From contig NC_043019.1 of NCBI RefSeq assembly GCF_006345805.1, positions 12,399,360-12,463,359 on the forward strand: 64,000 nucleotides of DNA. The letters are read 5' to 3'. The notes beneath the pieces were generated by a model. The model was not told the origin of the DNA. It ran no database searches and saw only the letters and a list, made by a program, of their open reading frames with translations. Below are positions 5,562-62,860 of this stretch, piece by piece (the stretch's first letter is position 1; every line of letters begins with the position of its first letter). This DNA is from Octopus sinensis (Eukaryota). Made by a program: the position numbers and the translations under genes.

Positions 5562-6779
5562 TACACATAGGTGCAGGAGTGGCTGTGTGGTAAGTAGCTT
5601 GCTTACCAACCACATGGTTCTGGGTTCATTCCCACTGTGTGGTACCTTGGGCCTGTCATATGTATATGTGTGTATATCTGTTCCCCCACCATCGCTTGAC
5701 AACCGATGCTGGTGTGTTTATGTCCCCGTAATAAGCCTAGTACTTATTCTATCAGTCTCTTTTGCCAGACCGCTAATTATGGGGACGTAAACACACCATC
5801 ATCGGTTCTCAAGCGATGTTGCGGGGGCAAACACAGACACTCAAACACTCACACACATATATACGATGAGCTTCTTTCAGTTTCCGTCTACCAAATAAAC
5901 TCACAAGGCTTTGGTCGGCCCAAGGCTATAGTAGAAGACACTCGCCCAAGGTGCCACGCAGTGGGACTGAACTCGGAACTATGTGGTTGGTAAGCAAGCT
6001 ACTTACCACTCAGCCAGTGGAATATTTGGGTCTGCTATGGCCTGTTTCAACATAAAACAGGTAGAATACTTGGGCCCCATGTGGTTGGTTTGAGCATAAA
6101 AACCAGGTAGAACATTTGGCTTGATATGGCTAGCTTAAATGCTAAAAGGTGAAGGCAGACTGGGCTGCTATTTCTAGCTGCTCGTGTAGCTACGCAAAGA
6201 GTTGTTTTATTGACTCAGTGACTGACTTAGTGGCGGTGGTGATGATGGTGATGACGGTTGTGTCAGTGCAGGCATAGTTGAGATTTGTGTTGTTTAATGA
6301 TCGGGAAAGAACTAATTTCATGGCCAAGCCATCGATCTGACCAAGGTGAAGTGGTGTAAGCTGCAGCGATGGTGGTAGTGGATGGTGTTGATGGTGGTGG
6401 TAGGTGCTACAGCAGTTTCATGGGATTAGCCTTGAGGCAGCTGGCTGAGATCTTTAAAGTATTCAAAGTAAAAAAAAACTTACAGCTGCTGGGCTACCAA
6501 GTAAAACGTGTGTATATATGTGTGCATGTGTACGTGTGTAGAAGGGGAGGGGGAGGTGCAGAAGCTTTAAAGCCAACCATTTACAGTTACTAAGTTTAAT
6601 TAGTCTTCCAGCAGGTCGGAACCAAGAAGGTTGTCTTAGCTTTTTTTACCTTTTTTACTTTTAATTTTCACGTTTACAAAAGACAAAAACTTACTTTCTG
6701 TTCTGTAACAACATCTCTTCACTATCACTACCTTTTTTTGCACACTTACATTTATTTATTTATATATATGTATATATAT

Positions 6780-23371: not shown

Positions 23372-26300
23372 TATATATATAATATATATATATATATACA
23401 CACATATATACGACGGGCTTCTTTCAGTTTCCATCTACCAAATCCACTCACAAGGCTTTGGTCGGCCCGGGGCTATAGTAGAAGACACTTGCCCAAGGTG
23501 CCACACAGTGGGACTGAACCCGGAACCATGTGTTTGGTAAGCAAGCTACTTACCACACAGCCACTCCTGCGCCTATGTTTTTTTTTTAATATCTTCTGTT
23601 TTTTTCATTTTTTGTTCTTCACAGCATCTGACCCGCTATTAATAGATATCAGTAGCTTCAACATCCATTCGATAGCTGGTGTGCTCAAGAAATACCTTCG
23701 AGAACTGCCCAACCCTGTAATTCCTGTTGAAAATTATGCCGACTTCATCAAAGCAGCTAGTAAGTGTTCTGTCATTCTTTCATTCTTTTTTTTGCTCAAT
23801 TGCTTTCTTATTGTCGACAGAATTGTCAGCATTTCTCAGACAAAATGCTTTGCAATCTTTCTTCCGACTCATTATGTTCTGAGTTCAAACTTCAACACAG
23901 GTCAGCTTTGCCTTTCATTGTAGAAACTCTGCCAGATCAAGATTGGAGCCTGGTGCAGCCATCTTGTTTGCCAGTCTTCAGACATATCGTCCAACCCATG
24001 CTAGCCTGGAAAGCGGATGTTAAACGACAATGATGATGATTATTATTATGATGATGGTGATTATTATTATTAGGGTGGAGGGCCAGCAGAATTGTTAGCA
24101 TGCCAGGCAAGCTGCTCAATGGCATTTCATCTGTCTTTACATTCTAAGTTCAAATTTCACTGAAGTTGACTTTACCTTTCATCCATTTGGGGTGGATAAA
24201 TTAAGTCCCAGTGAAACACTGGGTTCGATGTAATTGACTATCCCCCTCCCCCATATCTCAGGCCTGTGTCTTTCAGTAGAAAGGTTTATTAAGGTGGTGA
24301 ACAGGCAGAATCGTTAGCATGCCTGGCAAAATGCTTCACAGCATTTCATCTGTCTTTACATTCTGAGTTCAAATTCTGCCGAGGTCGACTTTGCCTTTCG
24401 TCTTTTTGGGGTCGATAAATTAAGTACCAGTGAAACACTGAGGTCAGTGTAATCAACCAGTTCCTTCCCCAGAAATTTCAGGCCTTGCACCTCCAGTAGA
24501 AAGGATTATTATTTGCAGAACCCTTTAGCGCATTGCACAAAAAACTTAGTAGCATTTCTTCCATCTCTTTGTTACCTCAAATGCTGCCGGGGTTAACTTC
24601 ACCTTTCATTCTTTCAGGATCGATAAAATTGTTTACTAGTTGAGCACTGGGGCCATTGTAATCGACTGAGCTCTTCCCTAAAGTTGCTGGCCTTGTGTCG
24701 AAATTGGAAACCATTATTTTTATCATTATTGATATTTTGCCATCTTTTTATGTCTCCTAATTATTTCCCTTTTTCTTTAAGATTCTAACTTTGACCACTG
24801 ACTTTACTTTTCTAACAACAGGGAAATTCTTAATTTATTTTGAATTATCTTCTAATCTAATAACTTATTCTAATTCATTGATTTTCACTTATAATTCAGT
24901 GATATTGCCAGTCCTCAGTATCATTATTGATATTTTGCCATCTTGTCTTTTGATGTCCCTTAAATTTATTTGTCCTTTCTTTAATTTTCAGTGGTCGGTT
25001 CCACAAACGAGAGAGACCTCATGACCTTGGTGACATCCTTACCCTCGGCCCATGCGTCCACGTTGCACTTCTTCATGAAACACTTCTGTCGTCTCTGGCA
25101 GATGCAGTACGAATCTGGCGTGCGAGACGACATAGAGAAGTTGTCGAAAGTGTTCTGTCACATCCTTCTGCGGCCCCCTTGGGAGCGAATTGTGTAAGTT
25201 GGGTCACTCGACCTTTAATTTTGTTTTGTGTGTGTGTGTGTGTGTGTGTTTAAGTGTGAGGCCCATGTGGTTAAGAAGTCCCCTTTTGGACCCTGTATGA
25301 ACAATTGGCTGTTATCTTCTACTATACTGAGTAAGAAGTCTGGAAAACACACAAAACGATGATGATATATATCATCATCATCATCGTTTAACGTCCGCTT
25401 TCCATGCTAGCATGGGTTGGATGATATGACTGATGTCTGGCGAACCAGATGGCTACACCAGACTCCATTCTGATCTGGCAGAATTTCTACAGCTGGATGC
25501 CCTTCCTAACACTCAACCACTCTGAGAGCGTAGTAGGTGCTCTTACATGCCACCGGCATGAGGGCCAGTCAGGCAGTACCGGCAACGGCCATGCTCAGAT
25601 GGTGTTTTTTACGTGCCACCTGCACAGGAGCCAGTCCAGCGGCACTGACAACGACCTTGCTTGAATGTTTTACACATGCTACCAGCACAAGTGCCAGTAA
25701 GGCAATGCAGGTAACGATCACGCTCAAATGGTGTTTTTTACGTACCACTGGCACCGATCAGGCTCAGGTGGTATTCTTAGCACTCCACTAGCACGGATGC
25801 CAGTTATTGAATTTGATTTCCATTTCACTTGCCTCAACAGGTCTTCGCAAGCAGAGTTTAGTGTTCAACGAAGGAAAGTATTCATTATGTGTGACAGAAG
25901 CAATATTAGTTTAGAATGGCAATCAGTGTATCATACTGAATTGGTCTGGGAATCAAACTCACTATCTTGTGATTGCAAGCTTGATGCTCTAACCACCTAG
26001 CCATGCACCTTGTTAATAGCATGTATGTTTGTTTGTTTTTTTGTTGTTGTTGTTGTTTTTTCTTTACTATTTTAATTATTTGATTTTCTTTCTTCCGTTT
26101 CGTACAGAGAAATTGTGGAGAATACAAAGTTACACATTGAGCTGGTTGAGAACTTGCTTTCTTATGGGGATTGGGGTGTGGAAAAACCAAATGTTCATAA
26201 TCCACCCCCTATACCCAAGCGACCCAGTAAGTTGTTTGTCACTATTATTATCATTATTATTATCATCATTATTATTATTATTATTATTAATATTATTACC

Positions 26301-45700: not shown

Positions 45701-46824
45701 ATCATCATCGTTTAACGTCCACTTTTCCATGCTAGCATGGGTTGGACAATTTGACTGAGGACCGGCGAACCAGAATGCTGCACCAGGCTCCAGTCTGATC
45801 TGGCAGAGTTTCTACAGCTGGATGCCCTTCCTAACGCCAAACACTCTGAGAGTGTAGTGGGTGCTTTTACATGCCACCGGCACGAGGGCCAGTCTGCTAG
45901 TACTGGCAACGGCCACACTCAAATGGTGTTTTTTGTGTGCCACTCCAGTGGCACTAGCAACGACCTCGACATTATATATATATAAATATATATTTATTCA
46001 AACCGGTTTTCGTCTAAATATTCTTGGCAAGTCATACAATGACGAAAACCGGTTTGAATAAATATATATTTATATATTTTATCAATTTCTCATTTCATTA
46101 AAATTTTCTTTCATTTGAGCATTCTGCATTTTTACAATTTTTCCTTGCTTATCATTTCTCCACGTGAGGTCAACACAACCCCACCATTTATTGATCTCTC
46201 TCTCTCTATATATATATATATATACATATCGACACGGTTTAATGTCCGCTTTCCATGCTAGCATGGGTTGGACGATTTTGACTGAGGACCGGCAAACCAG
46301 ATGGCTGCACCAGGCTCCAATCTGATCTGGCAGAGTTTCTACAGCTGGATGCCCTTCCTAATGCCAACCACTCAGAGTGTAGTGGGTGCTTTTACATGCC
46401 ACCAGCACGGGGGCCAGTCTGCTAGTACTGGCAATGGCCACGCTCAAATGGTGCTTTTTGTGTGCCACCTGCACAGGACCCACTCCAGTGGCACTGGCAA
46501 CGACCTCGACATTATGTATATATATATACATACATATCAACACGGTTTAACCTCCACATTCCATGCTAGCATGGGTTGGACGAATGACTGTGGGCTGGTG
46601 AACCAGACGGCTGCACCAGGCTCCAATCGTGATCTGGCAGTGTTTCTACTGCTGGATGCCCTTCCTAACGACAACCACTCTGAGAGTGTAGTGGGTGCTT
46701 GTATGTACCACCGGCACGAGGGCCAGTCTGCTAGTACTGGCAACGGCCATGCTTAAATGGTGTTTTTTGTGTGCCACCTGCACAGGAGCCACTCCAGTGG
46801 CACTGGCAACGACCTCGACATATG

Positions 46825-48589: not shown

Positions 48590-48967
48590 CGACAGGCTTC
48601 TTTCAGTTTCCGTCTGCCAAATCCACTCACAAGGCATTGGTCGGCCCGAGGTTATAGTAGAAGACACTTGCCCAAAATGCCACGCAGTGGGACTGAACCC
48701 GGACCATGTGGTTGGTAAGCAAGCTACTTACCACACAGCCACTCCTGCGGCTATTAGTGTCTGTTTCCATAGTAACAGGCAAAGCTGTAGGCCGCCTTGT
48801 TTTCACTATAACAAGGATGCTGTACTTAGCACAGCTGTGACACTTTGACCCCTGGAATGACCACCAGACTTTAAAAATAAGGGCCCGGATTGATTTGCTT
48901 AACTAAAGCTCTTCAAGGCAATGCTTCCGCAAGGCCGCACTCCAAAATAAAAAGGGGATAAAAGGAT

Positions 48968-49690
48968 AGGCGCAGGAGTGGCTGTGTGGTAAGTAGCTTG
49001 CTTACCAACCACATGGTTCTGGGTTCAATCCCACTGCATGGCACCTTGGGCAAATGTCTTCAACTATAGCCTTGAGTCGACCAATGCCTTGTGAGTGGAT
49101 TTGGTAGACGGAAACTGAAAGAAGCCTGTCGTATATATATATATATATGTGGAGGCGCAATGGGCTAGTGGATAGGGCAGCGGACTCGCTGTCGCAGGAT
49201 CGCGGTTTCGATTCCCAGACCGGGCGTTGTGTGTGTTTATTGAGCGAAAACACCTAAAAGCTCCATGAGGCTCCAGCAGGGGGTGGTGATCCCTGCTGTA
49301 CTCTTTCACCACTCTTTCTTCTGTTGGCCTGCTCGCTTAGCCAGCGGGGTGGCGTCATTCGAAGGCTAAAACAATGCGAACGCATTGTGACCAGTGATGT
49401 GTAACAACATCTGATGGTCTGGTCGGTCACGTGATCACGTGATATATATATATATATATATATATGCATTTGTGTCTATGTTTATGTGTCTGTTTGTCCC
49501 CCCAACATCGCTTGACAACCGATGGTAGTATGTTTACGTCTCCGTAACTTAGCGGTTTGGCAAAAGAGACCGATAGAATAAGTACCAGGCTTACAAAGAA
49601 TAAGTCCTGGGGTCGATTTGCTCGACTAAAGGCGGTGCTCCAGCTCGGCCGCAGTCATATGACTGACACAAGTAAAAGAGTAAGAGTAGG
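48968..49690 (+). mobile_element. SINE A interrupted in its (TA)n tract by a third tRNA-SINE (about 49150-49443)
   Basis: Insert head GGAGGCGCAATGGGCTAGTGG...GGTTTCGATTCCC; the SINE A halves lie on either side. Confidence 0.75.
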
Positions 49691-50044
49691 TAAGATAAAG
49701 ACTCACATTATTGTCTGGAGAACGTGGCCATAGCATTGCATGTATATTCTGTTAGTTCTTTTATTTGTTTACTTATTTCAGTCATTTAATTGTGGCCATA
49801 CTGGAGCACAGCCTTGAAGGGTTTCAGCTGAATAAACCGACCCCATTATTTTTTTAAACCTAGTATTACTTATATGCATATAGGCACAGGAGTGGCTGTG
49901 TGGTAAGTAGCTTGCTAACCAACCACATGGTTCCGGGTTCAGTCCCACTGCGTGGCACCTTGGGCAAGTGTCTTCTGCTATAGCCTCGGACCGACCAAAG
50001 CCTTGTGAGTGGATTTGGTAGACGGAAACTGAAGGAAGCCTGTC

Positions 50045-50081
<37 letters not shown>

Positions 50082-50877
50082 GATGTGTGTGTGTGTCTGT
50101 GTGTATATATGTATATATAATATATATATATATATATATAAATGTATGTGTGTTCGACGGGCTTCTTTCAGTTTCCGTCTACCAAATCCACTCACAAGGC
50201 ATTGGTTGGCCCAAGGCTATAGTTAAAAGACACTCGACCAAGGTGCCACGCAGTGGGATTGATCCCGTAATCACGTGGTTGAAAAGCAAGCTTATTTACC
50301 ACACAGCCACGCCTGCGCCTATGAAATCCATTAATATATATATATATATATATATATTCCTGACAATTAAAATAGATGAAAGTGGGGTGGGGTGGGACTG
50401 AAATTTCTTACAGCGCATGCCTACGAGATTAGCTCAGTGAATTGTCGCTAATCTCTCCATATCTGATTAAACGATTAGGTATGAAACGGTCATTAAATAA
50501 TTTAGTATCGCCTGGATTAAGGGAGATAACTCTAAATTATCTTTGGCTTCAATTATCAAGGTTAATGGCCTTCCTTCATCTCTATTTATTCCCTCTCTCT
50601 CTCTTTCTCTGCATTCTTACTCGCTCTCTTCCTATTGTCTCTCTTTTCCTATCCTTTTCTTCTTTTCCTTTTATCTGTTTCTTTGTTTCTTTCTCTTTCT
50701 CCTTTTGTTTCCTCTTTCTTTCTCTCTCATTATTATTTCTTTCTTTCGTTCTTTCTTTCCTGTCTGTCGTTCTTTCTTTCCTGTCGTTCTTTTCTTTCTT
50801 TCTTTCTTTCTTTCCTGTCGTTCTTTTCTTTCTTTCTTTCTTTCTTTCACCCTCCCTTCCTCCTTCCTTCCTGCCTT

Positions 50878-51323: not shown

Positions 51324-51354
<31 letters not shown>

Positions 51355-51628
51355 GTGTGTGGTGTGTGTGCGTGTGTATGTTTGTGTTTGTCCCTCCTCC
51401 ATCGCTTCACAACCAATGTTGGTGTGTTTATGTCTCCATAACCTAGCAGTTTGGCAAAAGAGACTGATAGAATAAGTACCAAACTTAAAAATGACATAAG
51501 TCATAAAAAAAAATAAAACCTTCAGGCAGAAACAAGTAAAATACAAAACATAAAACATACAAAGAAAATAAAAAACAAGAAAATATCAAATAAACAACAA
51601 CAGATCGTTTGATTGATGACAATAATAA

Positions 51629-51634
51629 TTTATT
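51629..51634 (-). terminator. Probable poly(A) signal of the GPx gene
   Basis: AATAAA on minus about 140 nt past the SECIS core, followed by a GU/U-rich tract (51600-51540). Confidence 0.6.
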
Positions 51635-51759
51635 CACCATTTATATTGTATTGTATTGTTTTTTTTTGGTTTTCTTAAGCCAAAACAGACTAGTGTCTCC
51701 AATGCTAGGATTAGAACACGTGATGTTCCACTTGGCAGAGGAATGCACAACTCTGACCA

Positions 51760-51835
51760 AATCGATGCATCGTATCAAGAGGGGCCACCAGATTCTTGCT
51801 GGTTTCGGCTGCCTCTGTCATGAAGGGTGTAAAGT
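51760..51835 (-). promoter_or_regulatory. SECIS element, form 2 (selenocysteine insertion)
   Basis: Minus strand reads AUGAC-AGAGGCAGCCG-AAA-CCAG-CAAGAAU-CUGG-UGGCCCCUCU-UGAU (51821 to 51774): UGAC/UGAU quartet, helix II, unpaired AAA and a 4-bp apical minihelix, downstream of the GPx stop. Confidence 0.85.
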
Positions 51836-51901
51836 GGCCTGGCACTAAGAGACACCGGGGAGCTTCCGGCTTGTCTTTGGACATGTTTATACACAATAAC
51901 A

Positions 51902-51936
<35 letters not shown>

Positions 51937-52279
51937 GAAGGCAGCGAGCTGCCAAAATCCATCGGCACGCTGAACAAATTGCTTAGCAGTATTTTGTCCC
52001 GTCTCCGTTCTGAACTCAGATTTTCCTCCCAACATCAACTCTGCCTTTCATTGTTTCAGGGTCGATAAAGTAAGTACCGGTCAAGTATGGGGTCCAATGT
52101 AACTGACATTCCCTTCCCTCACAAAATTGCTGGCCCCGTGCCAAACTTTGAAACTATTATTCTTTTTATAACTATAGCGCAGATCAAATTGCTTTTAAAG
52201 TATGCTTTAATACTTTTCATACATGTGTGTGTGTGAAATTATTTTGGGAACTTAAAAATAATATCTTTCTTTTCTTTAT

Positions 52280-52600
52280 GCCTTTAGCCCTCCAATGCGG
52301 AGTATAGGCCACTTATAGTTGAATTCCATGTCGCATAATTTTTGGCTTCTACTCTGCCATGAATGTCCCCCTTTCTCTAGTTCCTTTTGTGTTGATCTCC
52401 ACCACGAGTTCTTAGGCCTACATCTCCTGCTATATCCAACCGGTTTCCACTTTAAAGCACTTTTCGCTACATTTGGTGTGTCTTTTCTAATTGTGCTACC
52501 AATCCACTTCCACTTTTTCTTAAATATTTGCTCCCTATTCGAAACTTGATTTGTTCTTTGGCATAGCTCCCTATTGCTTATGTGTTCGGGCCATCTAATT
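52280..52600 (-). mobile_element. RTE-clade LINE C-terminal fragment inside the putative GPx 3' UTR
   Basis: IRWPEHISNRELCQRT...KWKWIG...ALKWKPVG...RPKNSW. Confidence 0.75.
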
Positions 52601-53556
52601 TTTAAAATAATATAGATACTTAAAATATTAATTTCTTTATAATTTGACACAAGACCAGCAATATTGATGGGATGGACAAATTGATTACATTAACCCCAGC
52701 ACTTGATCGATACTTATTTTATTGACCCCAAAAGGATGAAATACAAAGTTAAGTTCAGCTGGATTTGATCTCAGAATGCAGAAAATGGGAAGAAATTCTA
52801 CTAAAAGCATTTTGTCTGAAGCTTTAACGATTCTACCACCTCGCTGCCTTATAAGGAAATAATCATATCAATGATAATAGTTTTGTAATAATACTACCAC
52901 TAATACTAATAATGGTTATAAAACTACTTGATGATTTCGATCACTGAGAATGTGTTTCATGGAATATATTTTGAGGCTTAAAGGGGAAAATTTATTTTAT
53001 TTTGTATTTCATTTATTTAATTGCTGAATTGCTAGATTTCTAGCTCACAAAGGCATGAGAGGGGAAGATACAGAGTCCCATTAGAGATGAAAATCCTTGG
53101 AATATATATATATATTATATATTATATTATATATATATTGTATATATATATATATATATAAATATGTATGTATATAATATACACCACAACATATATATAT
53201 ATATACATATATAATAGATATATATATATATATATATATTATATACACACACATAATATATATAATATATATATATATATATACACCCATATATATATAT
53301 ATATATATATATATAACACACACACATATATATATATATATACACTATATATACATATATTATATATATAATATATATTATATATAATACATAATTATAT
53401 ATATATACATTACATATATATATGTATGTATGTATATAGTTTATATACATACATATATATATGTATGTATATAAGTTTATATGCATATATATATATATAT
53501 TGTGTATGTATATGTATTATATTTAATTTATATATGTAGTATGCATACATACACAC

Positions 53557-53632
<76 letters not shown>

Positions 53633-53919
53633 ATATACATACATACACCCCTTCCAAATCTAACTAGATCCTTTTATATAGAACTCCAAGAAGGATTTCT
53701 ATATATAAAAAGGGGTCTGTTAATTCTCAAGGATTTCCATCACTAACCAGATTCATGAAAGAGAAAATAATTCTTAACAAGCATCCACTTCTCCCAAACC
53801 CTCTCTCCATTCCACTTACACACACTGACACATACACACATGCACACACATTCACCCTCACATATACACATGCGTGTTCACTCATTCACACACGCAAAAA
53901 CAGGCATCATTCTATGCGA

Positions 53920-54126
53920 TTAAAATTCTTCTTTCTCTTCTAGAAGATGAACGATGTATGGTCGAATTTCGTCAGGAAGCACAGCTGTGGCGAAACGCAT
54001 GACTGGTTTTCCTTTACGGTTGATTAAGAACTTCTCGAAATTCCATCGGATGTCATTGGCACTCATCGGTTTGTAGTGGAGCCGTTCGACGAAAGCGAAG
54101 TCCTGTTTAGGGCTGGGGCAATAAGA
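53920..54126 (-). CDS. GPX3: Glutathione peroxidase (GPx3-like), last coding exon
   Basis: Pyrimidine tract and CAG acceptor, then SYCPSPKQDFAFVERLHYKPMSANDIRWNFEKFLINRKGKPVMRF...EEF*. DIRWNFEKFL is the GPx catalytic Trp/Asn motif; the phase-0 exon start matches the GPX3 FLK|NSCPP intron position. Confidence 0.92.
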   Translation of the reverse strand, partial: SYCPSPKQDFAFVERLHYKPMSANDIRWNFEKFLINRKGKPVMRFATAVLPDEIRPYIVHLLEEKEEF

Positions 54127-55747
54127 CTGAAAAAGAAATAAAAGAAGAAAAAAATCAGAAAAGAACATTTAGTATTATCGAAAGATTTGTGGCAGTGATT
54201 CGAAACCCCAACCATTAGAGAACCATTCAGACACCATAAGCAAACCATCACAGTTTCATGCGATCAGCCTGTTAACAACTCAATCAACATGAGGATGTTA
54301 CATGATATGGTTTTCTCGAATATTCTAGAATTTGGCTTCTGGTCCTCTATAAAAACCGTTTGGCTCCGATCTTAGAGCGCAGACAACTGAGATATTCTGA
54401 CACCATGGAGATTTGTGCTGTTGACATCGTCTATTTTGGGTCGACCTCAAGTTGTCACACAGACAACTTTCTGTAATTTCAGAGCAGCTGTCTCTTCCCT
54501 ACTCCATAATTATTAATGTTATCAAATGTAAATAACTAGGCATAGGAGTGGCTGTGTGGTAAGTAGCTTGCTTACCAACCACATAGTTCCGGGTTCAGTC
54601 CCACTGTGTGGCACCTTGGGCAAGTGTCTTCTACTATAGCCTCTTGCCGACCAAAGCCTTGTGAGTGGATCTGGTAGACGGAAACTGAAAGAAGCCCATC
54701 GTATATATGTATATATATATATATATGTGTGTGTGTGTTTGTGTGTGTGTGTATACGTTTGTGTGTTTGTGTTTGTCCCCTCAACATCGCTTGACAACCG
54801 ATGCTGGTGTGTTACGTCCCCATAACTTAGCGGTTCGGCAAAAGAGACTGATAGAATAAGTACTAAGCTTACGAAGAATAAGCCCTGGGGTCGATTTGCT
54901 CCAGTATGGTCACAGTCAAATGACTGAAACAAGTAAAAGAGTAAAAGAGTATGCAGTGACGATAACCTCAAAGAACCTTTGAAAAAATTAAACTGAAGGC
55001 GTTGGGGGTGGGACTAATTTTAAAAGAGAACTGAGAGAAAATATTGCAGTCGATGTGGTAGGGATGAGACTGGGGCTTGGCTATGCAATGACGGCATTCT
55101 CTGAGCTAAGAAGACTCGGGGAAACTGTCGACTTTGTGACTGGTGGACAAAGGCACTCTACATACATGACAGAATCACGATCCGGTTTTTGATGGATTGC
55201 GAAGGATGTGTGACATCTGATGGTATGAAGTGAATAAGGCGGCGAGCTGGCAGAAACGTTAGCGTGCCGGGCAAAATGCTCAGCGGTATTTCGTCTGTCG
55301 TTACGTTCTGAGTTCAAATTCTGCCGAGGTCGACTTTGCCTTTCATCCTTTCGGGGTTGATTAAATAAGTACCAGTTACGTACTGGGGTCGATGTAATCG
55401 ACTTAATACCTATGTCTGTCCTTGTTTGTCCCCTCTATGTTTAGCCCCTTGTGGGTAGTAAAGAAATAGGTATGAAGCGAATATGTGTGGATCTAAAGCA
55501 GCATTTTACGAAAGTTGGGAGCTGCGAGCGGGCTGGCGGGTGAAAAACAAAGTCGACTGGGCGGGATTTGAACTCGAGAGGTATAAGGATGTAAATGAAA
55601 AGCCGCAAATTTTTTAAAGTCTTTTTTCCAGCAGCAACAACAGCCGTTCAAGAATTTGGACCTGGAGATCTCCATTTCTAGCGACTTCGAGGGCCACCTC
55701 CCAGTGGTGTCGGGCGTCAGCGAAGACCCCCCTCGGCTACACAAGAT

Positions 55748-55847
55748 NNNNNNNNNNNNNNNNNNNNNNNNNNNNNNNNNNNNNNNNNNNNNNNNNNNNN
55801 NNNNNNNNNNNNNNNNNNNNNNNNNNNNNNNNNNNNNNNNNNNNNNN
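55748..55847. other. Assembly gap (100 N)
   Basis: Run of N. Confidence 1.
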
Positions 55848-55952
55848 AGGCTCGAAACGTTAAAGACTTATTCACTTCCCGAGCGTTATACTAATACATC
55901 TGTTTGTTGTCTACACCACCTGCCTTCATCTTTTTTTGTGAATTCTCTCCCT

Positions 55953-55990
<38 letters not shown>

Positions 55991-55991
55991 G

Positions 55992-56024
<33 letters not shown>

Positions 56025-56026
<2 letters not shown>

Positions 56027-56449
56027 TAATAAAAGGAGTTCCAACCTTGTCTGATTTTCACGTTTTATTTACAATCTTATAATGATATAATATAAGATAA
56101 TATAATATAATAGAATAAAATAAAATAGTAGAATGTTAAATGTTCATTCTGATTGAACTAGTACTTTCATGCATTAAATTCTGCAATCTTCGGGTTCATG
56201 TAGTAGTGGTGACAGTCATGCTTCACAATTTTTGACTGTCAAAAATTGTGAAGCATGACTGTCACCACTATTACATGTACCCGAAGATTGCAGAATTAAT
56301 GCATGAAAGTACTAGTTCAATCAGAATGAACATTTAAAATTCTACTTTTATTTTATTCTATTATATTATATTATCTTATATTATATCATTATAAGATTGT
56401 AAATAAAACGTGAAAAATCAGACAAGGTTGGAATTCCTTTTATAATATA
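56025..56449. repeat. About 420-bp near-perfect palindrome (fold-back)
   Basis: Centre TTTTTGAC-T-GTCAAAAA at 56237; arms of about 210 bp with few mismatches. Confidence 0.92.
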
Positions 56450-56482
56450 GTCTTCTATAACACACCCAATCCCAAACACTAC

Positions 56483-56532
<50 letters not shown>

Positions 56533-56537
56533 TATAT

Positions 56538-57185
56538 GAGACGCATAAATTATAACGGTTATTGACAATTTTGTTTTTTTCAGCATATTTGGCATTAGAA
56601 TTTTTCTTTTGCCCTCATTTTGTAAATTATTTATAAATTTAAACCTTTAAAGGTATTTTTTGAAATGCTGGCCATTGATAAAAATGTTTTCCCCCCAAAA
56701 AAAATTTATCCTACATTAGTTATAAATTGAATAGTGTTCACTTCCGGATTCTCTCACTCTGTGAAAGTTTCTAGTTCGAATCACACGTGTCTCGAGATGT
56801 GCCGAAGATTTTCTATTTTGGATATATTTGGGTACTTAGGTCTGCTCAGGACTTAGTGCTTGCTTTTTCCATGGGTATGAGTAAGTATTTCATTTATATC
56901 TCACGTATTTATCGCTGAAGAGGGGGAAATTCTTACGAATTAACCCCGAAATTGGGACCAATGCGGTAATAACGGATTTTTTAGAAATTTCTATCGGTTT
57001 GTTTCGAGACGCATAAATTATAATGGTTATTGACAATTTTGTCTTTTTTTCGGCATATTTGACATTAGAATTTTTCTTTTGTCCTTATTTTGTAAATTAT
57101 TTATAAATTTAACCTTTAAAGGTATTTTTTGATATGCTGGCCATTGATAAAAATTTTTTCCCGAAAAAATTTTATCCTACATTAG

Positions 57186-57190
<5 letters not shown>
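56538..57190. repeat. About 185-bp direct repeats with a 468-bp period
   Basis: GAGACGCATAAATTATA...CTACATTAGTTATA at 56538-56724 and 57006-57190. Confidence 0.9.
56906..56971 (+). ncRNA. Type-I hammerhead motif between direct repeats (cleavage-site nucleotide is G)
   Basis: UUAUCG-CUGAAGA-GGGG...CCCC-GAAA-UUGG-GA-CCAAU-G-CGGUAA. Confidence 0.55.
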
Positions 57191-57229
<39 letters not shown>

Positions 57230-57818
57230 TGTGTCATATAGCCAACTAGAAACAATGTTTCCTCGGGCTTAATATATATATATATGTTTCAGTCATTTGA
57301 CTGCGGTCATGCTGGAGCACTGCCTTAAAGGGTGTTAATTGAAGAAATCGACCCCAGGACTTATTCTTTGTAAGCCTAGTACTTATTCTATCGGTCTCTT
57401 TTGCCGAACCGCTAAGTTACGTGGACATAAACACACCAGCATCGGCTGTCAAGCGACAGTGGAGTAAGAAACACACACACACACACATATACGACGGGCT
57501 TCTTCCAATTTCCGCCTACCAAATTCACTCACAAGGCTTTGGTCACCCCGAGGCTATAGTAGAAGATACTTGTCTTAGGTGCCACGCAGTGGGACTGGAC
57601 CCAGACTCGTGTGGTTGGGAAGCGAGCATGTGTGTGTGTGTGTAAAGAGTTTAAACCGTAAGGCCAAAACATGCACGTCCATGTATAAATATAATTCAGA
57701 ATCATTATTTTTCTTCAGTACTGATGTACTCGTCACATCACACATTCTTACGTCCTTGGCACAAAAGTGATTCTCACCTCAAGTGGCGAGGCTTCGCGTT
57801 GTTAGCTGGACGACTTAC

Positions 57819-57881
57819 AGTGAATAGAAGAGACGCTGCACTTGATGAGGAGCTAATTAAGGGAATATGTGTGAATATCAT
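57819..57881 (-). CDS. Candidate first coding exon (MIFTHIPLISSSSSAASLLFT), possibly of the GPx gene
   Basis: ACAATGA start context, GTAAGT donor in phase 0 and CpG-rich flank; no homology evidence. Confidence 0.2.
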
Positions 57882-58098
57882 TGTTAAAGCAAGAATAAAA
57901 TAAATTAGAAGCCGGATGTTCTCTTGGAGTTTCTTTTCCTATCTTCAACAATAAAAAGAAAAGTAAAATAAAATATAAGGGAAAAAAAACAAAAGAAAAA
58001 GGAGAGAGAGAGAGAAAGAGCGAGGGGGAAAGAGAGAGAAAGAAAGAAAGAGAGCGAAAGCGAGAGAGAGAGGGAAGTGTGCAGTTTTTCATCAACAC

Positions 58099-58147
<49 letters not shown>

Positions 58148-58229
58148 GGTGAATAAATTGTCAAAATTACGCAAAAATGAAAATAACACAGATCTCATTT
58201 TAACATATATATTTACCAAAATTACATAA

Positions 58230-58950
58230 AAATATCTTGAAATACAATAAAATCGCCAATGGCTTCAACAATGGCCTCCAGACGACTTCGGAATCTCCTG
58301 CAACTCTTCTGAACAGTCACTTTGTTTAAGTCGATGAATGCTGCCGTAATCCTTGCCTTCAGTTCATCTTTGGTGTTACAAGGAGTTTTGTTGGTCTCTC
58401 GATTAACTGTGCCCCAACTTTAATTATCAATGGGATTGCAGTCTGAGGAGTTAGGTGGCCAGATGCTAGGGGTGATGTGACCGCAGAAATTGTCTGACAG
58501 CCATGACTGGGTTCGCCTGCTTGTGTGGCATGGTGCAGAGTCCTGTTGCCAGACATAGTGTGCTCCATCAACCATCCTCTTGACCCAGGGCAGCACTACC
58601 TCTTCCAGGCCTCTGTGTTGTGTCTGAGACCCCGTGGGAAGATGAATGGAGGCATAACGTCGCCATCACTAGTGATCACTCCAAACACCATGATGCTGAC
58701 TGGATGTTTGATTTTTATCACTCTCAGTACATGTCCTCAGATTGACACCCAGATACCCTGAAATGTTCGTATTGGGGCTTTCGGCACGAATGCCAAGCTG
58801 TACAACATGTCGTTTCCAAATTTCTGGCAGAGTGAATTGCGTAATGGTGCTGTTTTTTTCCATAGACGGTGCCCAACTGGTCCTATTATACTGTGTAGTC
58901 GACAAAATTAAAAATATAAAATGGCGACAATTTACCTATCGCACTCTGTA
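58230..58950 (-). mobile_element. Degenerate Tc1/mariner-superfamily transposase, DD37D (maT-like)
   Basis: Minus frame WQQDSAPCHTSRRTQSWLSDNFCGHITPSIWPPNSSDCNPID has 37 residues between the 2nd and 3rd catalytic Asp; stops and frameshifts; TACAGAGTG end near 58950. Confidence 0.8.
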
Positions 58951-58971
58951 TATATATATATATGTGTGTGG

Positions 58972-59014
<43 letters not shown>

Positions 59015-59192
59015 TGTGTGTGTGTGTGTTTATGTATATATTCATATATAGACCGGAGTAAACACATAAATGTGAAACAAGGTGGAAAAAAGAGTACTCA
59101 AATACCAGTGGTAGAGTAATATGCTTTATTTTAAGCAGCAGAAAATTCAACAAAATCTGTTACTCTGAGTTTCTCGTTGCCGTTCATCAGAC

Positions 59193-59281
59193 CCTCCACC
59201 CCCCACTTCTTTTGACACATCCGGTTGCTCTTTGGTTGTAGTCGACAACATTGTGTTTGTGTGTATGTGTGCCTTTGTACA

Positions 59282-59359
<78 letters not shown>

Positions 59360-59999
59360 AAGGCATAATCGCATATGTATGAAGCCAATATAGTATTTGT
59401 TCATACACACACACACATACACACACATTCGCACACACACACATGTACGAGTATATATATATGTGTGTGTATAATATATACATTCTTTATATATATATAT
59501 ATATGAATATATACATAAACACACACACACACACACATTCGCACACACACACATGTACGAGTATATATATATATGTGTGTGTGTGTGTATAATATATACA
59601 TTCTTTATATATATATATATATGTATATATATGAATATACTTTATTTTAAGCAGCAGAAAATTCAACAAAATCTGTTACTCTGAGTTTCTCGTTGCCGTT
59701 CATCAGACAGTTTTTGCTAGAATGGAACTTATATATTAATATATAAGTTCCATTCTAGCAAAACTGTCTGATGAACGGCAACGAGAAACTCAGAGAGTAA
59801 CAGATTTTGTTGAATTTTCTGCTGCTTAAATAAAGTATATTCATATATATACATATATATATATATATAAGAATGTATATATTATACACACACACACACA
59901 TATATATATGCTCGTACATGTGTGTGTGTGCGAATGTGTGTGTATGTGTGTGTGTGTATGAACAAATACTATATTGGCTTCATACATATGCGATTATGC

Positions 60000-60039
<40 letters not shown>

Positions 60040-60131
60040 GCATGTACAAAGGCACACATACACACAAACACAATGTTGTCGACTACAACCAAAGAGCAAC
60101 CGGATGTGTCAAAAGAAGTGGGGGGTGGAGG
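59193..60131. repeat. About 940-bp imperfect palindrome centred at 59737/59738
   Basis: 59641-59737 mirrors 59738-59835; 59193-59500 mirrors 59860-60131. Confidence 0.85.
59673..59803. ncRNA. Back-to-back pair of hammerhead motifs (minus 59673-59710, plus 59764-59803); third, truncated copy on minus at 59157-59192
   Basis: CUGU-CUGAUGA-ACGGCAACGA-GAAA-CUC(A or AGA)GAG-U-A-ACAG; stem II is short. Confidence 0.5.
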
Positions 60132-60634
60132 AATAAGAAGCAACGAATAAATATATACGAATAAATAAACACCCAAAATAAAATAAAATAAAATAAAATG
60201 AAAATGAAAACTAAAATAAATTAGGTTGAAAAGCAAAGCAAATGTAACATGTCTTCATTGCAACATTTCCATTCTTGTCATGAAAACAAAAAAAACAAAT
60301 GCTACGAAAAGTATTTTGGTTGTTACATGTTTGCAGACCGGCTTCTGGCGAGTGACATTTCCGGTGTTTCAACTCGAGCCTTTCAGCTGTTTCTTGGCTT
60401 AACAAAAATAACTTATGAAGGTCGACTGGCTGGAGAAATGTTACATTAGAAGGGACAGCCTTCTGTTAAAATTTCTATGACCGCTTTTGTTTCCCCGAGT
60501 TGTGAATTCCCAGTTCCCCTATCAATCTGTGGGACCGATGTAATCGACTACCCCACCCCCACCCCCACCCCTAAAAACCCCTAAGAATTTCAGGTCTTGT
60601 GCCCTTAGCAGAAAGGATCATCATTATTATTATT

Positions 60635-60712
<78 letters not shown>

Positions 60713-61230
60713 GTTGTTGTTATTGTTGTTGTTACTACTATTGAGAGAGAGCAGTGCATGCCCTCAAAGTAACACTGGGGTAAAATATACGAAGCCCAAT
60801 ATACCCATCATGACTACCCGTCTGATATGGGTACACCAGGCACATGCATCACAACCATATGTGCGCGACATGGTGATCTCATATCAAGATAAACAGCACA
60901 TGACCTTGCAGGTGGGGCCCAGTTAGAAATTTCTTCAGGTTGAGTAGCCCATCCCGCTCGAAAGGTCCCTGAATAAGGGTTGTTTAAGGATGTTGAAAGA
61001 ACCACCCATGTTTCCAAAGGTGAATTATTCAAACCCCAAAGAATCCCTCTCAACACATGGCTATGATACTCCCCACTACTTCTGCTCGTGATCAGAAATG
61101 CACATATCGTCAGCCACTAAGGGACATGCTCAACTGGTTACGGTCAAACAACTGACAAGCAAATCTGTGGTATTGAGCAGAATATTTGCTGTAGCCCGTC
61201 TTTTATACCAAGACAGAACAATGTACATAC

Positions 61231-61299
<69 letters not shown>

Positions 61300-61300
<1 letters not shown>

Positions 61301-62230
61301 GGCCGTCAGCCACGCTTGACCTCGCTCCGTGAATTTTGTAAGGGAAAAACACATAATAGTGTATTCGTATCCTTCAAGTTTACACCACCGTGGACAACAA
61401 GTTATTTGATGTCGAGTGGTGAGTTTATTTTCTGTTTTGTCCTTCATTCTGGGGCGACAGGTCAAGTGACGATTCTGACAGCTCGCCACCTTTCAAAACG
61501 TAAAGATGGACGAAAATGCCGCCAAGCATTTTGCTTGGCGTGCAAACGATTGTACCAAGTTGCCGCCTTCCATGTCTTATAAGAATAATGACGAGAAAGT
61601 CATAAAAATTAAGAATTTCTATTTTTGTCCCAAGGTTAGGCAAATTTCATAGAGTTAGGTAATTTAGGTCTTAAGGTTAGGCCAATTGAGGCATGGATAT
61701 ACCTAATACAAAAAATGAAGGCTTTAAATAGAAATTCTTAATTTTTAGGACTTTCTCATCATTATTATTATAAGACATGGTAGGAAGTCAATGTTCCACC
61801 ATGTCTAATATTTAAAAAAAAATTTTTATGGTGGGATACAAAAGGAAGTCTTTCCACAACAACATCAGCAGCACCATCAACAACTACAACAACAACAATA
61901 GCAATGGTGACGACAACAACAACGATGACGCTCATTTGTGAGAGAGGGGGAGAGAGTGAGGAGCGTCACGAGATGTCCACGAGGGAGTAGTGCGCGTGTG
62001 CGTGCGAAGCGACTTGGGGCTAGTAAAAACAGCAGACGATAGCAGTATTTTTGTCGAAAAAAAGGACAAAAAGGTCAAAAGAGCCAATTTTTTTCTGGAA
62101 GGATCTCTTAGGAGATCTTCGGAAAAGCAAAGGCACCGTTTTTGACAACATTGTTCGAAATAAACAGCAATTTCGACAATGTAAACAATGAGAGACCTTT
62201 CGTCAGCGAAGCAACGGACGAGGTGAGTAT
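61300..62230 (+). promoter_or_regulatory. CpG-rich non-repeat region with two strong donors; candidate promoter and first exon(s) of a downstream + gene
   Basis: Local CpG enrichment; G|GTGAGT donors at 61419 (after ATG TCG AGT G) and at 62223. Confidence 0.35.
61571..61779. mobile_element. MITE-like element with about 54-bp terminal inverted repeats
   Basis: CATGTCTTATAAGAATAATGACGAGAAAGTC... and its near reverse complement. Confidence 0.65.
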
Positions 62231-62262
62231 GTAGCGTAGACTCGGTTGTAATTCCTCTCTTA

Positions 62263-62860
62263 AGGCGGTGAGCTGGCAGAATCGTTAGCACGCCGGGCGA
62301 AATGCGTAGCCGTATTTCGTCTGCCGTTACGTTCTGAGTTCAAATTCCGCCGAGGTCGACTTTGCCTTTCGTCCTTTCGGGGTCGATAAATTAAGGACCA
62401 GTTACGCACTGGGGTCGATGTAATCGACTTAATCCGTTTGTCTGTCCTTGTTTGTCCGCTCTGTGTTTAGCCCCTTGTGGGTAGTAAAGAAATAGGTATT
62501 TCGTCTGTCGTTACGCTCTGAGTTCAAATTATTCCGAGGTCGACTTTGCCTTTCGTCCTTTCGGGGTCGATAAATTAAGGACCAGTTACGCACTGGGGTC
62601 GCTATAATCGACTTAATCCGTTTGTCTGTCCTTGTTTGTCCTCTCTGTGTTTAGCCCCTTGTGGGTAGTAAAGAAATAGGTATTTCGTCTGTCGTTACGC
62701 TCTGAGTTCAAATTATTCCGAGGTCGACTTTGCCTTTCGTCCTTTCGGGGTCGATAAATTAAGGACCAGTTTCGCACTGGGGTCGCTATAATCGACTTAA
62801 TCCGTTTGTCTGTCCTTGTTTGTCCCCTCTGTGTTTAGCCCCTTGTGGATAGTAATAAAA
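62263..62860 (+). mobile_element. tRNA-derived SINE family B with three tandem body copies (about 180 bp); clusters also at 24070-24720, 27765-28730 and 55228-55470
   Basis: AAGGCGGTGAGCTGGCAGAA...GAGTTCAAATTCCGCCGAGGTCGACTTTGCCTTTC..CCTTTCGGGGTCGATAAATTAAG; the central domain resembles MetaSINE cores. Confidence 0.85.

What the first reader, a model, noticed from the sequence alone, without database searches (positions are those of the whole stretch)
51774..51821. Form-2 SECIS about 2.1 kb from the GPx stop: a likely hidden selenoprotein
Seen: AUGAC, an 11-nt helix arm, AAA, a CCAG/CUGG minihelix, the complementary arm and UGAU, on the GPx strand and just before AATAAA plus a GU-rich tract. 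Known: this is the eukaryotic SECIS consensus, GPx1-4 are selenoproteins, and pipelines often truncate them at UGA. Helix I below the quartet is weak by eye. Inference: the missing active-site exon has an in-frame UGA.
Basis: partly seen in the sequence, partly recalled or inferred. Interest (0 to 1): 0.75.

Follow-up and report, generated by a model that had tools for sequence, protein, structure and literature searches.

The report
Octopus GPx selenoprotein SECIS element
The flagged hairpin is very probably a real selenocysteine-insertion signal in the 3' end of an octopus glutathione peroxidase gene whose public annotation is cut short at the selenocysteine codon; this is an ordinary kind of annotation gap, but the signal is followed by a second conserved hairpin that seems undescribed.

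Summary
On the minus strand at 51821-51774 lies AUGAC / 11-nt arm / AAA / CCAG-loop-CUGG / 10-nt arm / UGAU. It sits 2.1 kb after the TAA (53922-53920) of a GPx3-like last exon (54126-53920) and 140 nt before AATAAA (51634-51629).

That exon is identical to the C-terminus of Octopus vulgaris 'glutathione peroxidase 6', annotated as only 139 aa starting at the first Met after the active site. In the O. vulgaris chromosome, exon 1 carries an in-frame TGA at the catalytic position (VNVASF-TGA-GATPQY). All 15 homologous transcripts or exon-1 sequences inspected have the same TGA.

A covariance model trained only on SECIS elements from three non-cephalopod homologues picks this site as the single strong hit in the window (37 bits, E=3e-6; next 16 bits). 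A distant cephalopod homologue has the same element 1.2 kb after its stop, with two compensatory pair changes.

Rfam's SECIS model misses the site, but it also misses five of six homologous SECIS elements.

Not shown: transcript continuity across the repeat-laden 2.1 kb, and actual Sec insertion. The window itself lacks exons 1-2 (assembly gap, window end).

An added finding is a second covarying hairpin (51760-51731, loop UUGUGCAUUC) just 3' of the SECIS, shared across this GPx family.

The parts
53920..54126 (-). Last coding exon of a GPx3-like glutathione peroxidase: SYCPSPKQ...RWNFEKFLINRKGKPVMRF...EEKEEF, with TAA at 53922-53920 and an AG acceptor at 54128-54127.
   Evidence: The sequence is. 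tblastn with GPX3 and homologues finds it. It is identical to residues 72-139 of P0008, O. vulgaris 'glutathione peroxidase 6'.
51610..53919 (-). Inferred 3' UTR of about 2.3 kb, not demonstrated. It carries an (AT)n array at 53102-53645, a LINE-like ORF fragment at 52276-52650, a SINE-like element ending in (AAT)11 at 51902-51935, and several internal AAUAAA/AUUAAA hexamers.
   Evidence: Tandem repeats are, ORFs and hexamers. The stretch is collinear with O. vulgaris L003. Continuity as one transcript is an inference.
51774..51821 (-). Form-2 SECIS element: AUGA quartet, helix II, unpaired AAA, mini-helix CCAG/CUGG with a 7-nt loop, and UGAU. The model hit extends to 51770-51825.
   Evidence: Supported, and by model R2 at 37.0 bits, E=3.2e-6. 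It is conserved in L001 with compensatory changes. Covariation across 7 sequences is shown.
51731..51760 (-). Second conserved hairpin, 14 nt 3' of the SECIS: UUGG-U-CAGAG / loop UUGUGCAUUC (51750-51741) / CUCUG-CCAAG.
   Evidence: Found. Model R3, trained on four non-cephalopod mRNAs, scores it 28.5 bits, E=3.5e-5, with the next hit at 15.5 bits. Covariation across 10 sequences is shown.
51629..51634 (-). AAUAAA poly(A) signal, followed by a U/GU-rich tract at about 51620-51560.
   Evidence: L001 has AAUAAA 112 nt after its SECIS.
55748..55847 (.). A 100-N assembly gap where collinearity with O. vulgaris stops. The penultimate GPx exon (L003 26617-26760) should lie just beyond it and is absent from the window.
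   Evidence: tblastn finds no exon 2 in the window.

Best explanation
**What it is.** Window 51821-51774 (minus strand) is the SECIS element of an octopus GPx3-like selenoprotein gene. The full gene has three coding exons and encodes about 219 aa, as seen in O. vulgaris. Exon 1 carries UGA as codon 72, at the catalytic site VNVASF-U-GATPQY. Only the last exon (54126-53920) lies in this window.

**How it works (inferred from the established eukaryotic Sec pathway).** The mRNA runs from the TAA through about 2.1 kb of repeat-rich 3' UTR to the SECIS. It ends about 20-30 nt after AAUAAA (51634-51629). The AUGA/UGAU tandem G.A quartet forms a kink-turn bound by SBP2. SBP2 recruits eEFSec and Sec-tRNA[Ser]Sec to the ribosome, so the UGA is read as selenocysteine rather than stop.

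**Annotation consequence.** Pipelines treated the UGA as a stop. O. vulgaris was therefore given a 139-aa fragment starting at the next Met. O. bimaculoides was given a model that skips the UGA-bearing part.

**Accessory hairpin.** A second conserved hairpin (51760-51731, loop UUGUGCAUUC) follows the SECIS throughout this GPx family. It probably binds a factor that tunes SECIS function or mRNA fate.

**Shown versus inferred.**
- Shown: the sequence and structure, the in-frame TGA in the ortholog, and conservation and covariation of both hairpins.
- Inferred: that the SECIS lies in the same transcript, that Sec is inserted, and any role for the second hairpin.
For: 1. **Structure.** All form-2 SECIS motifs are present with the right spacing, N + 11 nt between AUGA and AAA. 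The SECIS elements of the homologues have the same spacing.
2. **Independent model.** R2 was built only from the SECIS elements of L006, L007 and L013. It scores this site 37.0 bits, E=3.2e-6. The next hit in 128 kb of searched strand is 16.1 bits. R2 gives single top hits at the equivalent place in O. vulgaris (37 bits) and in the distant cephalopod L001 (33.3 bits).
3. **Reciprocal test.** A model built from window + L001 retrieves the 3'-UTR SECIS elements of L013 (E=9e-5), L006 (0.003) and L007 (0.2).
4. **Conservation.**
   - L001 has the element 1.19 kb after its stop, with AAUAAA 112 nt further on.
   - Relative to the window, two pairs changed on both sides (A-U to G-C, G-C to A-U) and one became G.U.
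   - The best local alignment of the window block against L001's 3 kb downstream region is exactly this block. It scores 122 against a null of 70.5 +/- 7.8, 0/500.
5. **Covariation.** In the 7-sequence alignment, 90.7% of cells pair and 10 of 11 pairs show double changes. The covariation score is 0.861 against 0.254 for shuffles (0/500) and at most 0.32 for slid registers.
6. **The gene needs a SECIS.**
   - O. vulgaris exon 1 has an in-frame TGA at the Sec position.
   - The spliced product matches Pfam GSHPx over the full profile at 115 bits.
   - The homologous transcripts L004, L005, L007-L013 and L085-L087 all carry TGA there.
7. **Uniqueness.** The SECIS block has no other copy in the window. 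No other credible SECIS lies within 10 kb downstream of the stop.
Against: - Rfam SECIS_1 gives no hit, even at E<=10 on a 201-nt slice. This is weakened by the control: it scores only 1 of 6 homologous SECIS elements, and that one is below its gathering score.
- Helix I below the quartet is weak and not conserved.
- Folding energy is not exceptional.
- The 2.1 kb between stop and SECIS is full of repeats and holds seven AAUAAA/AUUAAA hexamers, so some or all transcripts could end before the SECIS.
- No cDNA or RNA-seq evidence was available.
- Exons 1 and 2 are not in the window, so the TGA is shown only in a 94-99% identical ortholog.
- R2's training elements were the top hits of a seed model that included the window. 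This biases R2 somewhat towards candidate-like SECIS elements.
- Sequence similarity to L001 is not significant under two of the four scoring schemes tried.
Confidence: 0.88

Rival explanations
1. The hairpin is a chance SECIS look-alike in AT-rich intergenic or repeat DNA and has no function. The real SECIS, if any, lies elsewhere.
For: - The bare motif pattern is common: 16 hits against 24.6 expected.
- Folding z-scores are weak.
- Rfam is silent.
- Helix I is poor.
Against: - The independent model gives E=3e-6, with a 21-bit gap to the next hit.
- The same element, with compensatory changes, lies downstream of the homologous gene in L001.
- No alternative candidate lies within 10 kb.
- The adjacent second hairpin is also conserved, in the same order and at similar spacing as in bona fide Sec-GPx mRNAs.
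Confidence: 0.03
2. The SECIS is real but was carried in by a transposable element, or it serves another unannotated selenoprotein gene rather than the GPx gene.
For: - The interval between the GPx stop and the SECIS is packed with repeats, and a SINE-like element ends about 85 nt upstream.
- SECIS-bearing Naiad retroelements exist in clams and spiders (PMC8557442).
Against: - The 261-nt SECIS neighbourhood is single-copy in the window and in L003.
- Naiad SECIS elements are type I, and Naiads are only remnants in cephalopods.
- The SECIS-plus-hairpin module is the same one found in the 3' UTRs of homologous GPx mRNAs from other animals.
- In L001 it lies 1.2 kb after the GPx stop.
- No other ORF with a selenoprotein signature lies between stop and SECIS.
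Confidence: 0.03
3. The SECIS is a functional-looking relic. In this lineage the GPx mRNA mostly ends at an upstream poly(A) signal, or the gene is decaying. The UGA then acts as a stop and the transcript is subject to nonsense-mediated decay.
For: - Seven AAUAAA/AUUAAA hexamers lie between stop and SECIS, and repeat insertions have lengthened the UTR from about 1.2 to 2.1 kb.
- A human GPX3 variant that splices out the SECIS is described (PMC3316567).
Against: - The coding sequence downstream of the UGA is intact and keeps the catalytic Gln, Trp and Asn. It is identical between the two octopus assemblies and about 96% identical to O. bimaculoides.
- The SECIS and hairpin 2 are free of disrupting changes, and are 100% identical between the window and O. 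vulgaris while the flanks differ.
Confidence: 0.06

Closest known systems
Eukaryotic form-2 (type II) SECIS elements of selenoprotein mRNAs, such as those of vertebrate GPx genes (Rfam RF00031 SECIS_1)
   Same: It has the AUGA...GA kink-turn quartet, a helix II of about 10 bp, unpaired AAA 12 nt after the quartet, an extra mini-helix with a small apical loop, and a 3'-UTR position upstream of the poly(A) signal.
   Different: It has no convincing helix I. It scores below detection with the Rfam model, as do most SECIS elements of this invertebrate GPx clade. It lies unusually far from the stop (2.1 kb) because of repeat insertions. It is always followed by a second conserved hairpin.
Vertebrate GPx3/GPx5/GPx6 clade and mollusc selenium-dependent GPx
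   Same: It has the GSHPx domain and the active-site context VNVAS(F/Y)-U-G. It also has the motif DIRWNFEKFL and the oligomerisation-loop segment typical of GPx1/2/3-type enzymes.
   Different: The N-terminus is His-rich (MTTRQNHVHNHGHGHGH...) with no obvious signal peptide in the exon found. The gene has three coding exons and a 16.5-kb first intron in O. vulgaris. Public models are truncated (P0008) or mis-spliced (P0112).
SELENOS (SelS) SL2, a conserved stem-loop immediately downstream of the SECIS (PMC3628699)
   Same: It is a structurally conserved hairpin directly 3' of a SECIS. Its stem sequence varies while the ability to fold is kept, and its position would let it influence SECIS function.
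   Different: SelS SL2 displays an AU-rich element in its loop, and its sequence is not conserved. The GPx hairpin has a nearly invariant (U)UG(U/C)GCAUU(C/U) loop and belongs to a different protein family. No functional data exist for it.

Membership tests
Eukaryotic SECIS element (form 2) | Non-Watson-Crick quartet: (A/G)UGA on the 5' strand opposite GA on the 3' strand | tested here: met
   AUGA lies at 51821-51818 and UGAU at 51777-51774. Both are invariant in L001 and the homologues.
Eukaryotic SECIS element (form 2) | Helix II of about 9-12 bp separating the quartet from an unpaired AAR motif | tested here: met
   It has 5 bp, a 2x1 internal loop and 3-4 bp, with AAA 12 nt after AUGA. 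In the 7-sequence alignment, 10 of 11 pairs covary.
Eukaryotic SECIS element (form 2) | AAR in an internal loop, followed by a mini-helix and a small apical loop (form 2 rather than form 1) | tested here: met
   CCAG/CUGG forms the mini-helix, with a 7-nt loop.
Eukaryotic SECIS element (form 2) | Helix I below the quartet and internal loop | tested here: inconclusive
   Only 2-3 scattered pairs are possible, and RNAalifold finds no conserved helix I. The 3' flank is instead taken up by the lower stem of hairpin 2.
Eukaryotic SECIS element (form 2) | Match to the curated covariance model (Rfam SECIS_1, gathering score 35 bits) | tested here: not met
   There is no hit at the gathering score or at E<=10. 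In the control, the model scores only 1 of 6 SECIS elements in homologous Sec-GPx mRNAs, at 26.3 bits.
Eukaryotic SECIS element (form 2) | Located in the 3' UTR of an mRNA with an in-frame UGA | tested here: inconclusive
   The in-frame TGA is shown in the O. vulgaris ortholog. The site is on the same strand, 2.1 kb after the stop and 140 nt before AAUAAA. No transcript data were available.
Eukaryotic SECIS element (form 2) | SBP2 binding and UGA recoding activity | not testable with these tools
   This needs a binding assay or a reporter assay.
Selenocysteine-containing glutathione peroxidase (GPx3-like) | GSHPx domain | tested here: met
   Pfam PF00255 matches the spliced O. vulgaris exons at 115 bits over profile positions 1-108. 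The window's exon is identical to its last 68 residues.
Selenocysteine-containing glutathione peroxidase (GPx3-like) | UGA at the catalytic position, with Gln, Trp and Asn of the tetrad retained | tested here: met
   The TGA lies at L003 9974-9976 in the context VNVASF-TGA-GATPQY, with CNQF and RWNF present. It was met in the ortholog; exon 1 is outside this window.
SELENOS-SL2-like accessory hairpin | Conserved stem-loop immediately 3' of the SECIS | tested here: met
   The hairpin at 51760-51731 starts 14 nt after the SECIS. In the 10-sequence alignment, 8 of 8 pairs covary.
SELENOS-SL2-like accessory hairpin | AU-rich element displayed in the loop; inhibits Sec insertion | tested here: not met
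   The loop is UUGUGCAUUC, not an ARE. Any effect on Sec insertion is not testable here.

The most novel reading that the evidence does not exclude
This GPx3-like family may use a bipartite 3'-UTR module rather than a lone SECIS. The module is a SECIS with little or no helix I, followed within about 15-30 nt by an obligatory long hairpin. The hairpin's loop, (U)UG(U/C)GCAUU(C/U), is nearly invariant from octopus to unrelated marine invertebrates, while its stem covaries freely. The hairpin would be a previously undescribed cis-element. It could be a docking site for a SECIS-associated or stability factor, or a structural substitute for helix I. Either way it would tune Sec insertion or mRNA fate for this GPx.
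Probability: 0.45. Interest if true: 0.6.

Novelty: new member of a known kind. Interest (0 to 1): 0.38.

Why it matters
**Annotation.** The octopus 'glutathione peroxidase 6' entries are fragments. The real product is a selenoprotein of about 219 aa with Sec at position 72. Any cephalopod redox, selenium or mercury-toxicology work that uses the annotated sequences misses the catalytic residue. It is one more documented case of the systematic mis-annotation of selenoproteins.

**Biology.** The SECIS itself is textbook. The invariant-loop hairpin that accompanies it across distant animals is a concrete, testable candidate for a family-specific regulator of selenocysteine decoding. Only a few such accessory elements are known, for example SELENOS SL1/SL2 and the SELENON SRE.

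Tried and rejected
- **Rfam.** No SECIS hit for the window. I rejected this as evidence against, because the same model misses 5 of 6 SECIS elements in homologous mRNAs that carry the Sec TGA.
- **Active-site exon in the window.** Exon 2 falls at the N gap and exon 1 lies beyond the window end.
- **Exact-protein look-ups that failed.** The window ORF, the O. bimaculoides protein and a fur-seal GPX6 are not on record. I therefore have no intermediate-distance octopod ortholog and no vertebrate test of hairpin 2.
- **Walking upstream in the L001 contig.** Exon 1 is not within 10 kb, so the Sec status of the L001 gene is not shown directly.
- **Generic alignment of the two cephalopod 3' regions.** BLAST and permissive Smith-Waterman gave nothing significant. 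Only stricter gap penalties on the a-priori 3-kb region did.
- **MAFFT alignment of SECIS elements.** The 3' halves were misaligned, so I used model-based alignment instead.
- **Helix I.** No conserved pairing was found.
- **Loop-motif resemblances, from memory only.** I considered an IRE, a Pumilio/FBF site, an RBFOX site and miRNA seed matches. None fits all the variants, so none is claimed.
- **Pfam on the LINE-like and mariner-like ORFs.** No hits. Their identity rests on my recollection of such elements.
- **Literature.** No paper in the held library describes an octopus Sec-GPx or a GPx post-SECIS hairpin. The library is incomplete.

Full report
**1. The observation**

- AUGA (51821-51818), then C
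- an 11-nt arm AGAGGCAGCCG
- AAA
- CCAG, a 7-nt loop, CUGG
- a 10-nt arm UGGCCCCUCU
- UGAU (51777-51774)

RNAfold recovers the expected stem without constraints, though the energy is not unusual (z = -0.5 to -1.3). AATAAA lies at 51634-51629, 140 nt downstream, followed by a U/GU-rich tract.

The GPx exon on the same strand runs from an AG acceptor to TAA, 54126-53920. The SECIS therefore starts about 2.1 kb after the stop.

The bare motif pattern is not rare: 16 matches against 24.6 expected. A pattern-plus-pairing scan leaves this as the only site of its quality in the window. It finds 0.1 such sites per dinucleotide-shuffled window. I designed that scan after seeing the candidate.

**2. The gene**

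The last exon is GPx3-like (DIRWNFEKFL). A protein search shows it is 100% identical to the C-terminus of 'Glutathione peroxidase 6 [Octopus vulgaris]' (P0008). That entry is only 139 aa long and starts at MNALQ, the first Met after the active site. The O. bimaculoides entry (P0112) joins the N-terminal exon directly to the last exon. Both are classic selenoprotein mis-predictions.

The O. vulgaris locus (L003, GCA_951406725.2 OX597836.1) is 94-99% identical to the window and collinear from 51325 to 55236. Its exon 1 reads ...GTA GCC AGT TTC TGA GGG GCA ACC..., that is VNVASF-TGA-GATPQY. This puts an in-frame TGA at codon 72, the catalytic position. Exons 1-3 spliced give about 219 aa and cover the whole Pfam GSHPx profile at 115 bits.

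The window itself lacks exon 1, which lies about 19 kb upstream, beyond position 64000. It also lacks exon 2, which falls at a 100-N gap at 55748-55847. After that gap the window is no longer collinear with O. vulgaris.

Transcripts of homologues from metatranscriptomes all carry TGA at the same position (L004, L005, L007-L013 and L085-L087). This GPx clade is therefore generally selenocysteine-dependent and must have SECIS elements.

**3. Is the hairpin a SECIS?**

*Rfam.* SECIS_1 does not hit the site at the gathering score, or at E<=10 on a 201-nt slice. As a control I ran the same library on the homologous Sec-GPx transcripts. Nothing reached the gathering score. At E<=10 only one of six was found, L010 at 26.3 bits against a threshold of 35. 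The Rfam negative is therefore uninformative for this clade.

*SECIS elements of the homologues.* My scanner located SECIS-like elements in the 3' UTRs of L005, L006, L007, L010, L012 and L013. All have the same N + 11 nt spacing between (A/G)UGA and AAA as the candidate.

*Model from the candidate.* A seed model built from the window and its cephalopod homologue (R1) retrieved the 3'-UTR SECIS elements of:
- L013, E=9e-5
- L006, E=0.003
- L007, E=0.2

These were its best hits in 25.7 kb of searched strand.

*Model without the candidate.* A second model (R2) was built only from those three non-cephalopod elements. It scanned the whole window on both strands with filters off. Site 51770-51825(-) scored 37.0 bits, E=3.2e-6, and the next hit scored 16.1 bits. 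R2 likewise gives single top hits in O. vulgaris (L003 31013-31068, 37 bits) and in L001 (11335-11384, 33.3 bits).

*Caveat.* R2's architecture and its choice of training elements were seeded by a model that included the window. The E-value is therefore somewhat optimistic.

**4. Conservation**

L001 is a contig from ENA assembly ERZ21867824. Its GPx exons are 67% identical in protein to octopus, and I take it to be a more distant cephalopod. It carries AUGAU-GGGGAUGUCCG-AAA-CC-UUACAC-GG-UGGUCUCCCU-UGAU 1.19 kb after its stop, and AAUAAA 112 nt later.

In the shared register with the window:
- two helix-II pairs changed on both sides (A-U to G-C, G-C to A-U)
- one pair became G.U
- one pair next to the internal loop is lost

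The best local alignment of the window block against the 3 kb after L001's stop is this block (window 51825-51728 = L001 11335-11426). With +5/-4 scoring it scores 122 against a null of 70.5 +/- 7.8, 0/500. Two other scoring schemes were not significant.

In a model-fitted alignment of seven SECIS elements, 90.7% of cells pair and 10 of 11 pairs show double changes. The covariation score is 0.861, against 0.254 for shuffles (0/500) and at most 0.32 for slid registers.

The 261-nt neighbourhood is single-copy in the window and in L003. This argues against a transposon-borne SECIS such as those of Naiad elements (PMC8557442).

**5. What remains inferred**

No transcript data were reachable. The interval between stop and SECIS contains:
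- a 544-bp (AT)n array
- a LINE-like ORF fragment
- a SINE-like element with an (AAT)11 tail
- seven AAUAAA/AUUAAA hexamers

Shorter isoforms without the SECIS, or a 3'-UTR intron, are therefore possible. In L001 the same interval is only 1.2 kb, which is consistent with repeat insertions having stretched the octopus UTR.

Helix I is not evident in either cephalopod.

**6. An unexpected companion element**

Immediately 3' of the SECIS there is a second hairpin at window 51760-51731: UUGG-U-CAGAG / UUGUGCAUUC / CUCUG-CCAAG. The same feature follows the SECIS in every homologous mRNA that extends far enough. Its loop is nearly invariant while the stems differ:

| Locus | 5' arm | Loop | 3' arm |
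|---|---|---|---|
| L007 | GGUCUGAG | UUGUGCAUUG | CUCUGCC |
| L008 | GACUGUCC | UUGUGCAUUC | GGACUGUC |
| L085 | AUAUGGACU | UUGUGCAUUC | GGUCCAUAU |
| L086 | UGGUC | UUGUGCAUUC | GACCA |
| L001 | CUGGUGGU | ACUUGUGCAUUCA | ACCGCCAG |

L006, L088, L011, L005, L013, L087 and L010 carry variants of the (U)UG(N)GCAUU(C/U) loop.

Tests of this hairpin:
- **Model trained on other animals.** Model R3 was built from four non-cephalopod hairpins. It finds the window copy as its only strong hit: 28.5 bits, E=3.5e-5, with the next hit at 15.5 bits.
- **Position.** In 71.6 kb of loci, its ten best hits are all the post-SECIS sites.
- **Covariation.** In that 10-sequence alignment, 85.9% of cells pair and all 8 pairs show double changes. 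The covariation score is 0.872, against 0.300 for shuffles (0/500) and at most 0.21 for slid registers.
- **Simple control.** Contiguous stems around these GCAUU motifs average 7.2 bp, against 4.4 bp for 55 other GCAUU sites in the same transcripts (p=2e-4).

Nothing in Rfam matches it. I found no paper describing it. The nearest precedent is SL2 of SELENOS, a conserved stem-loop immediately downstream of that SECIS, in a region that inhibits Sec insertion (PMC3628699). The function here is unknown. I favour an accessory role in SECIS function or mRNA fate.

**7. Verdict**

What is there is an ordinary, un-annotated form-2 SECIS serving a mis-annotated octopus Sec-GPx. It is a new member of a well-known kind, worth a correction to the gene models but not surprising.

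The companion hairpin is the part that may be new. It deserves a family-wide survey and a reporter test.

Noticed in passing
window 51731-51760 (-); also L001 11394-11422, L003 31078-31107, L007 1009-1038, L008 905-934, L085 1485-1514, L086 1380-1409, L005 1479-1510, L006 932-960, L088 1556-1584, L087 1364-1395: A second hairpin lies about 15-30 nt 3' of the SECIS, with a nearly invariant loop (U)UG(U/C)GCAUU(C/U) and freely covarying stems. It is shared by this Sec-GPx family from octopus to unrelated marine invertebrates. It is not in Rfam, and I found no paper describing it.
   Followed up: yes
window 55748-55847 and 55848-62270: A 100-N assembly gap lies exactly where collinearity with the O. 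vulgaris chromosome ends. The penultimate GPx exon is missing from the window. The roughly 6.4 kb after the gap does not match the O. vulgaris intron at >=93% identity, which suggests a possible misjoin or a large insertion.
   Followed up: partly
window 53102-53645, 52276-52650 (-), 51902-52100: The putative 3' UTR is loaded with repeats. There is a 544-bp (AT)n array and an ORF fragment resembling the C-terminal tail of an RTE-type LINE ORF2 (from memory; no Pfam hit). There is also a SINE-like element ending in (AAT)11 only about 85 nt upstream of the SECIS. All of them are shared with O. vulgaris.
   Followed up: partly
proteins P0008 (O. vulgaris), P0112 (O. bimaculoides), P0038 (Lamellibrachia satsuma); many 130-145-aa metatranscriptome ORFs: Public GPx models in this clade are systematically truncated at, or spliced around, the Sec codon. 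They start at MNALQ, or the VNVASxUG segment is skipped. The roughly 140-aa length class in the search output is the signature of this.
   Followed up: partly
window 58420-58721 (-): Two adjacent ORF fragments (…WQQDSAPCHTSRRTQSWL…) look like remnants of a mariner/Tc1-type DDE transposase. This is from memory; there is no Pfam hit at E<=0.01.
   Followed up: no
window, many sites, e.g. 50005-50226, 48599-48649, 49072-49122, 54522-54971, 5873-5947: A short interspersed repeat family is scattered through the window on both strands, usually next to (TA)n/(TATG)n microsatellites. Its translation reads …[14 protein letters not shown]….
   Followed up: no
window 25426-25474 (+) and 46584-46633 (+): Two copies of one repeat match the loose ATGA...AA...TGAT motif pattern but lack SECIS pairing. 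They show why motif-only SECIS scans give false positives in this genome.
   Followed up: no
L086 1312-1366: The presumed SECIS of this homologous Sec-GPx transcript appears to start with UUGA rather than (A/G)UGA. It scores poorly with R2 (11.9 bits), yet the canonical hairpin 2 follows it. It may be a non-canonical quartet or a mis-assigned SECIS.
   Followed up: no
L009 (1667 nt) and L089 (1711 nt): L009 carries the Sec TGA. L089's TGA was not verified. In neither did my scanners or model R3 identify a convincing SECIS or hairpin 2, despite long 3' UTRs. R2 was run on L009 only.
   Followed up: no
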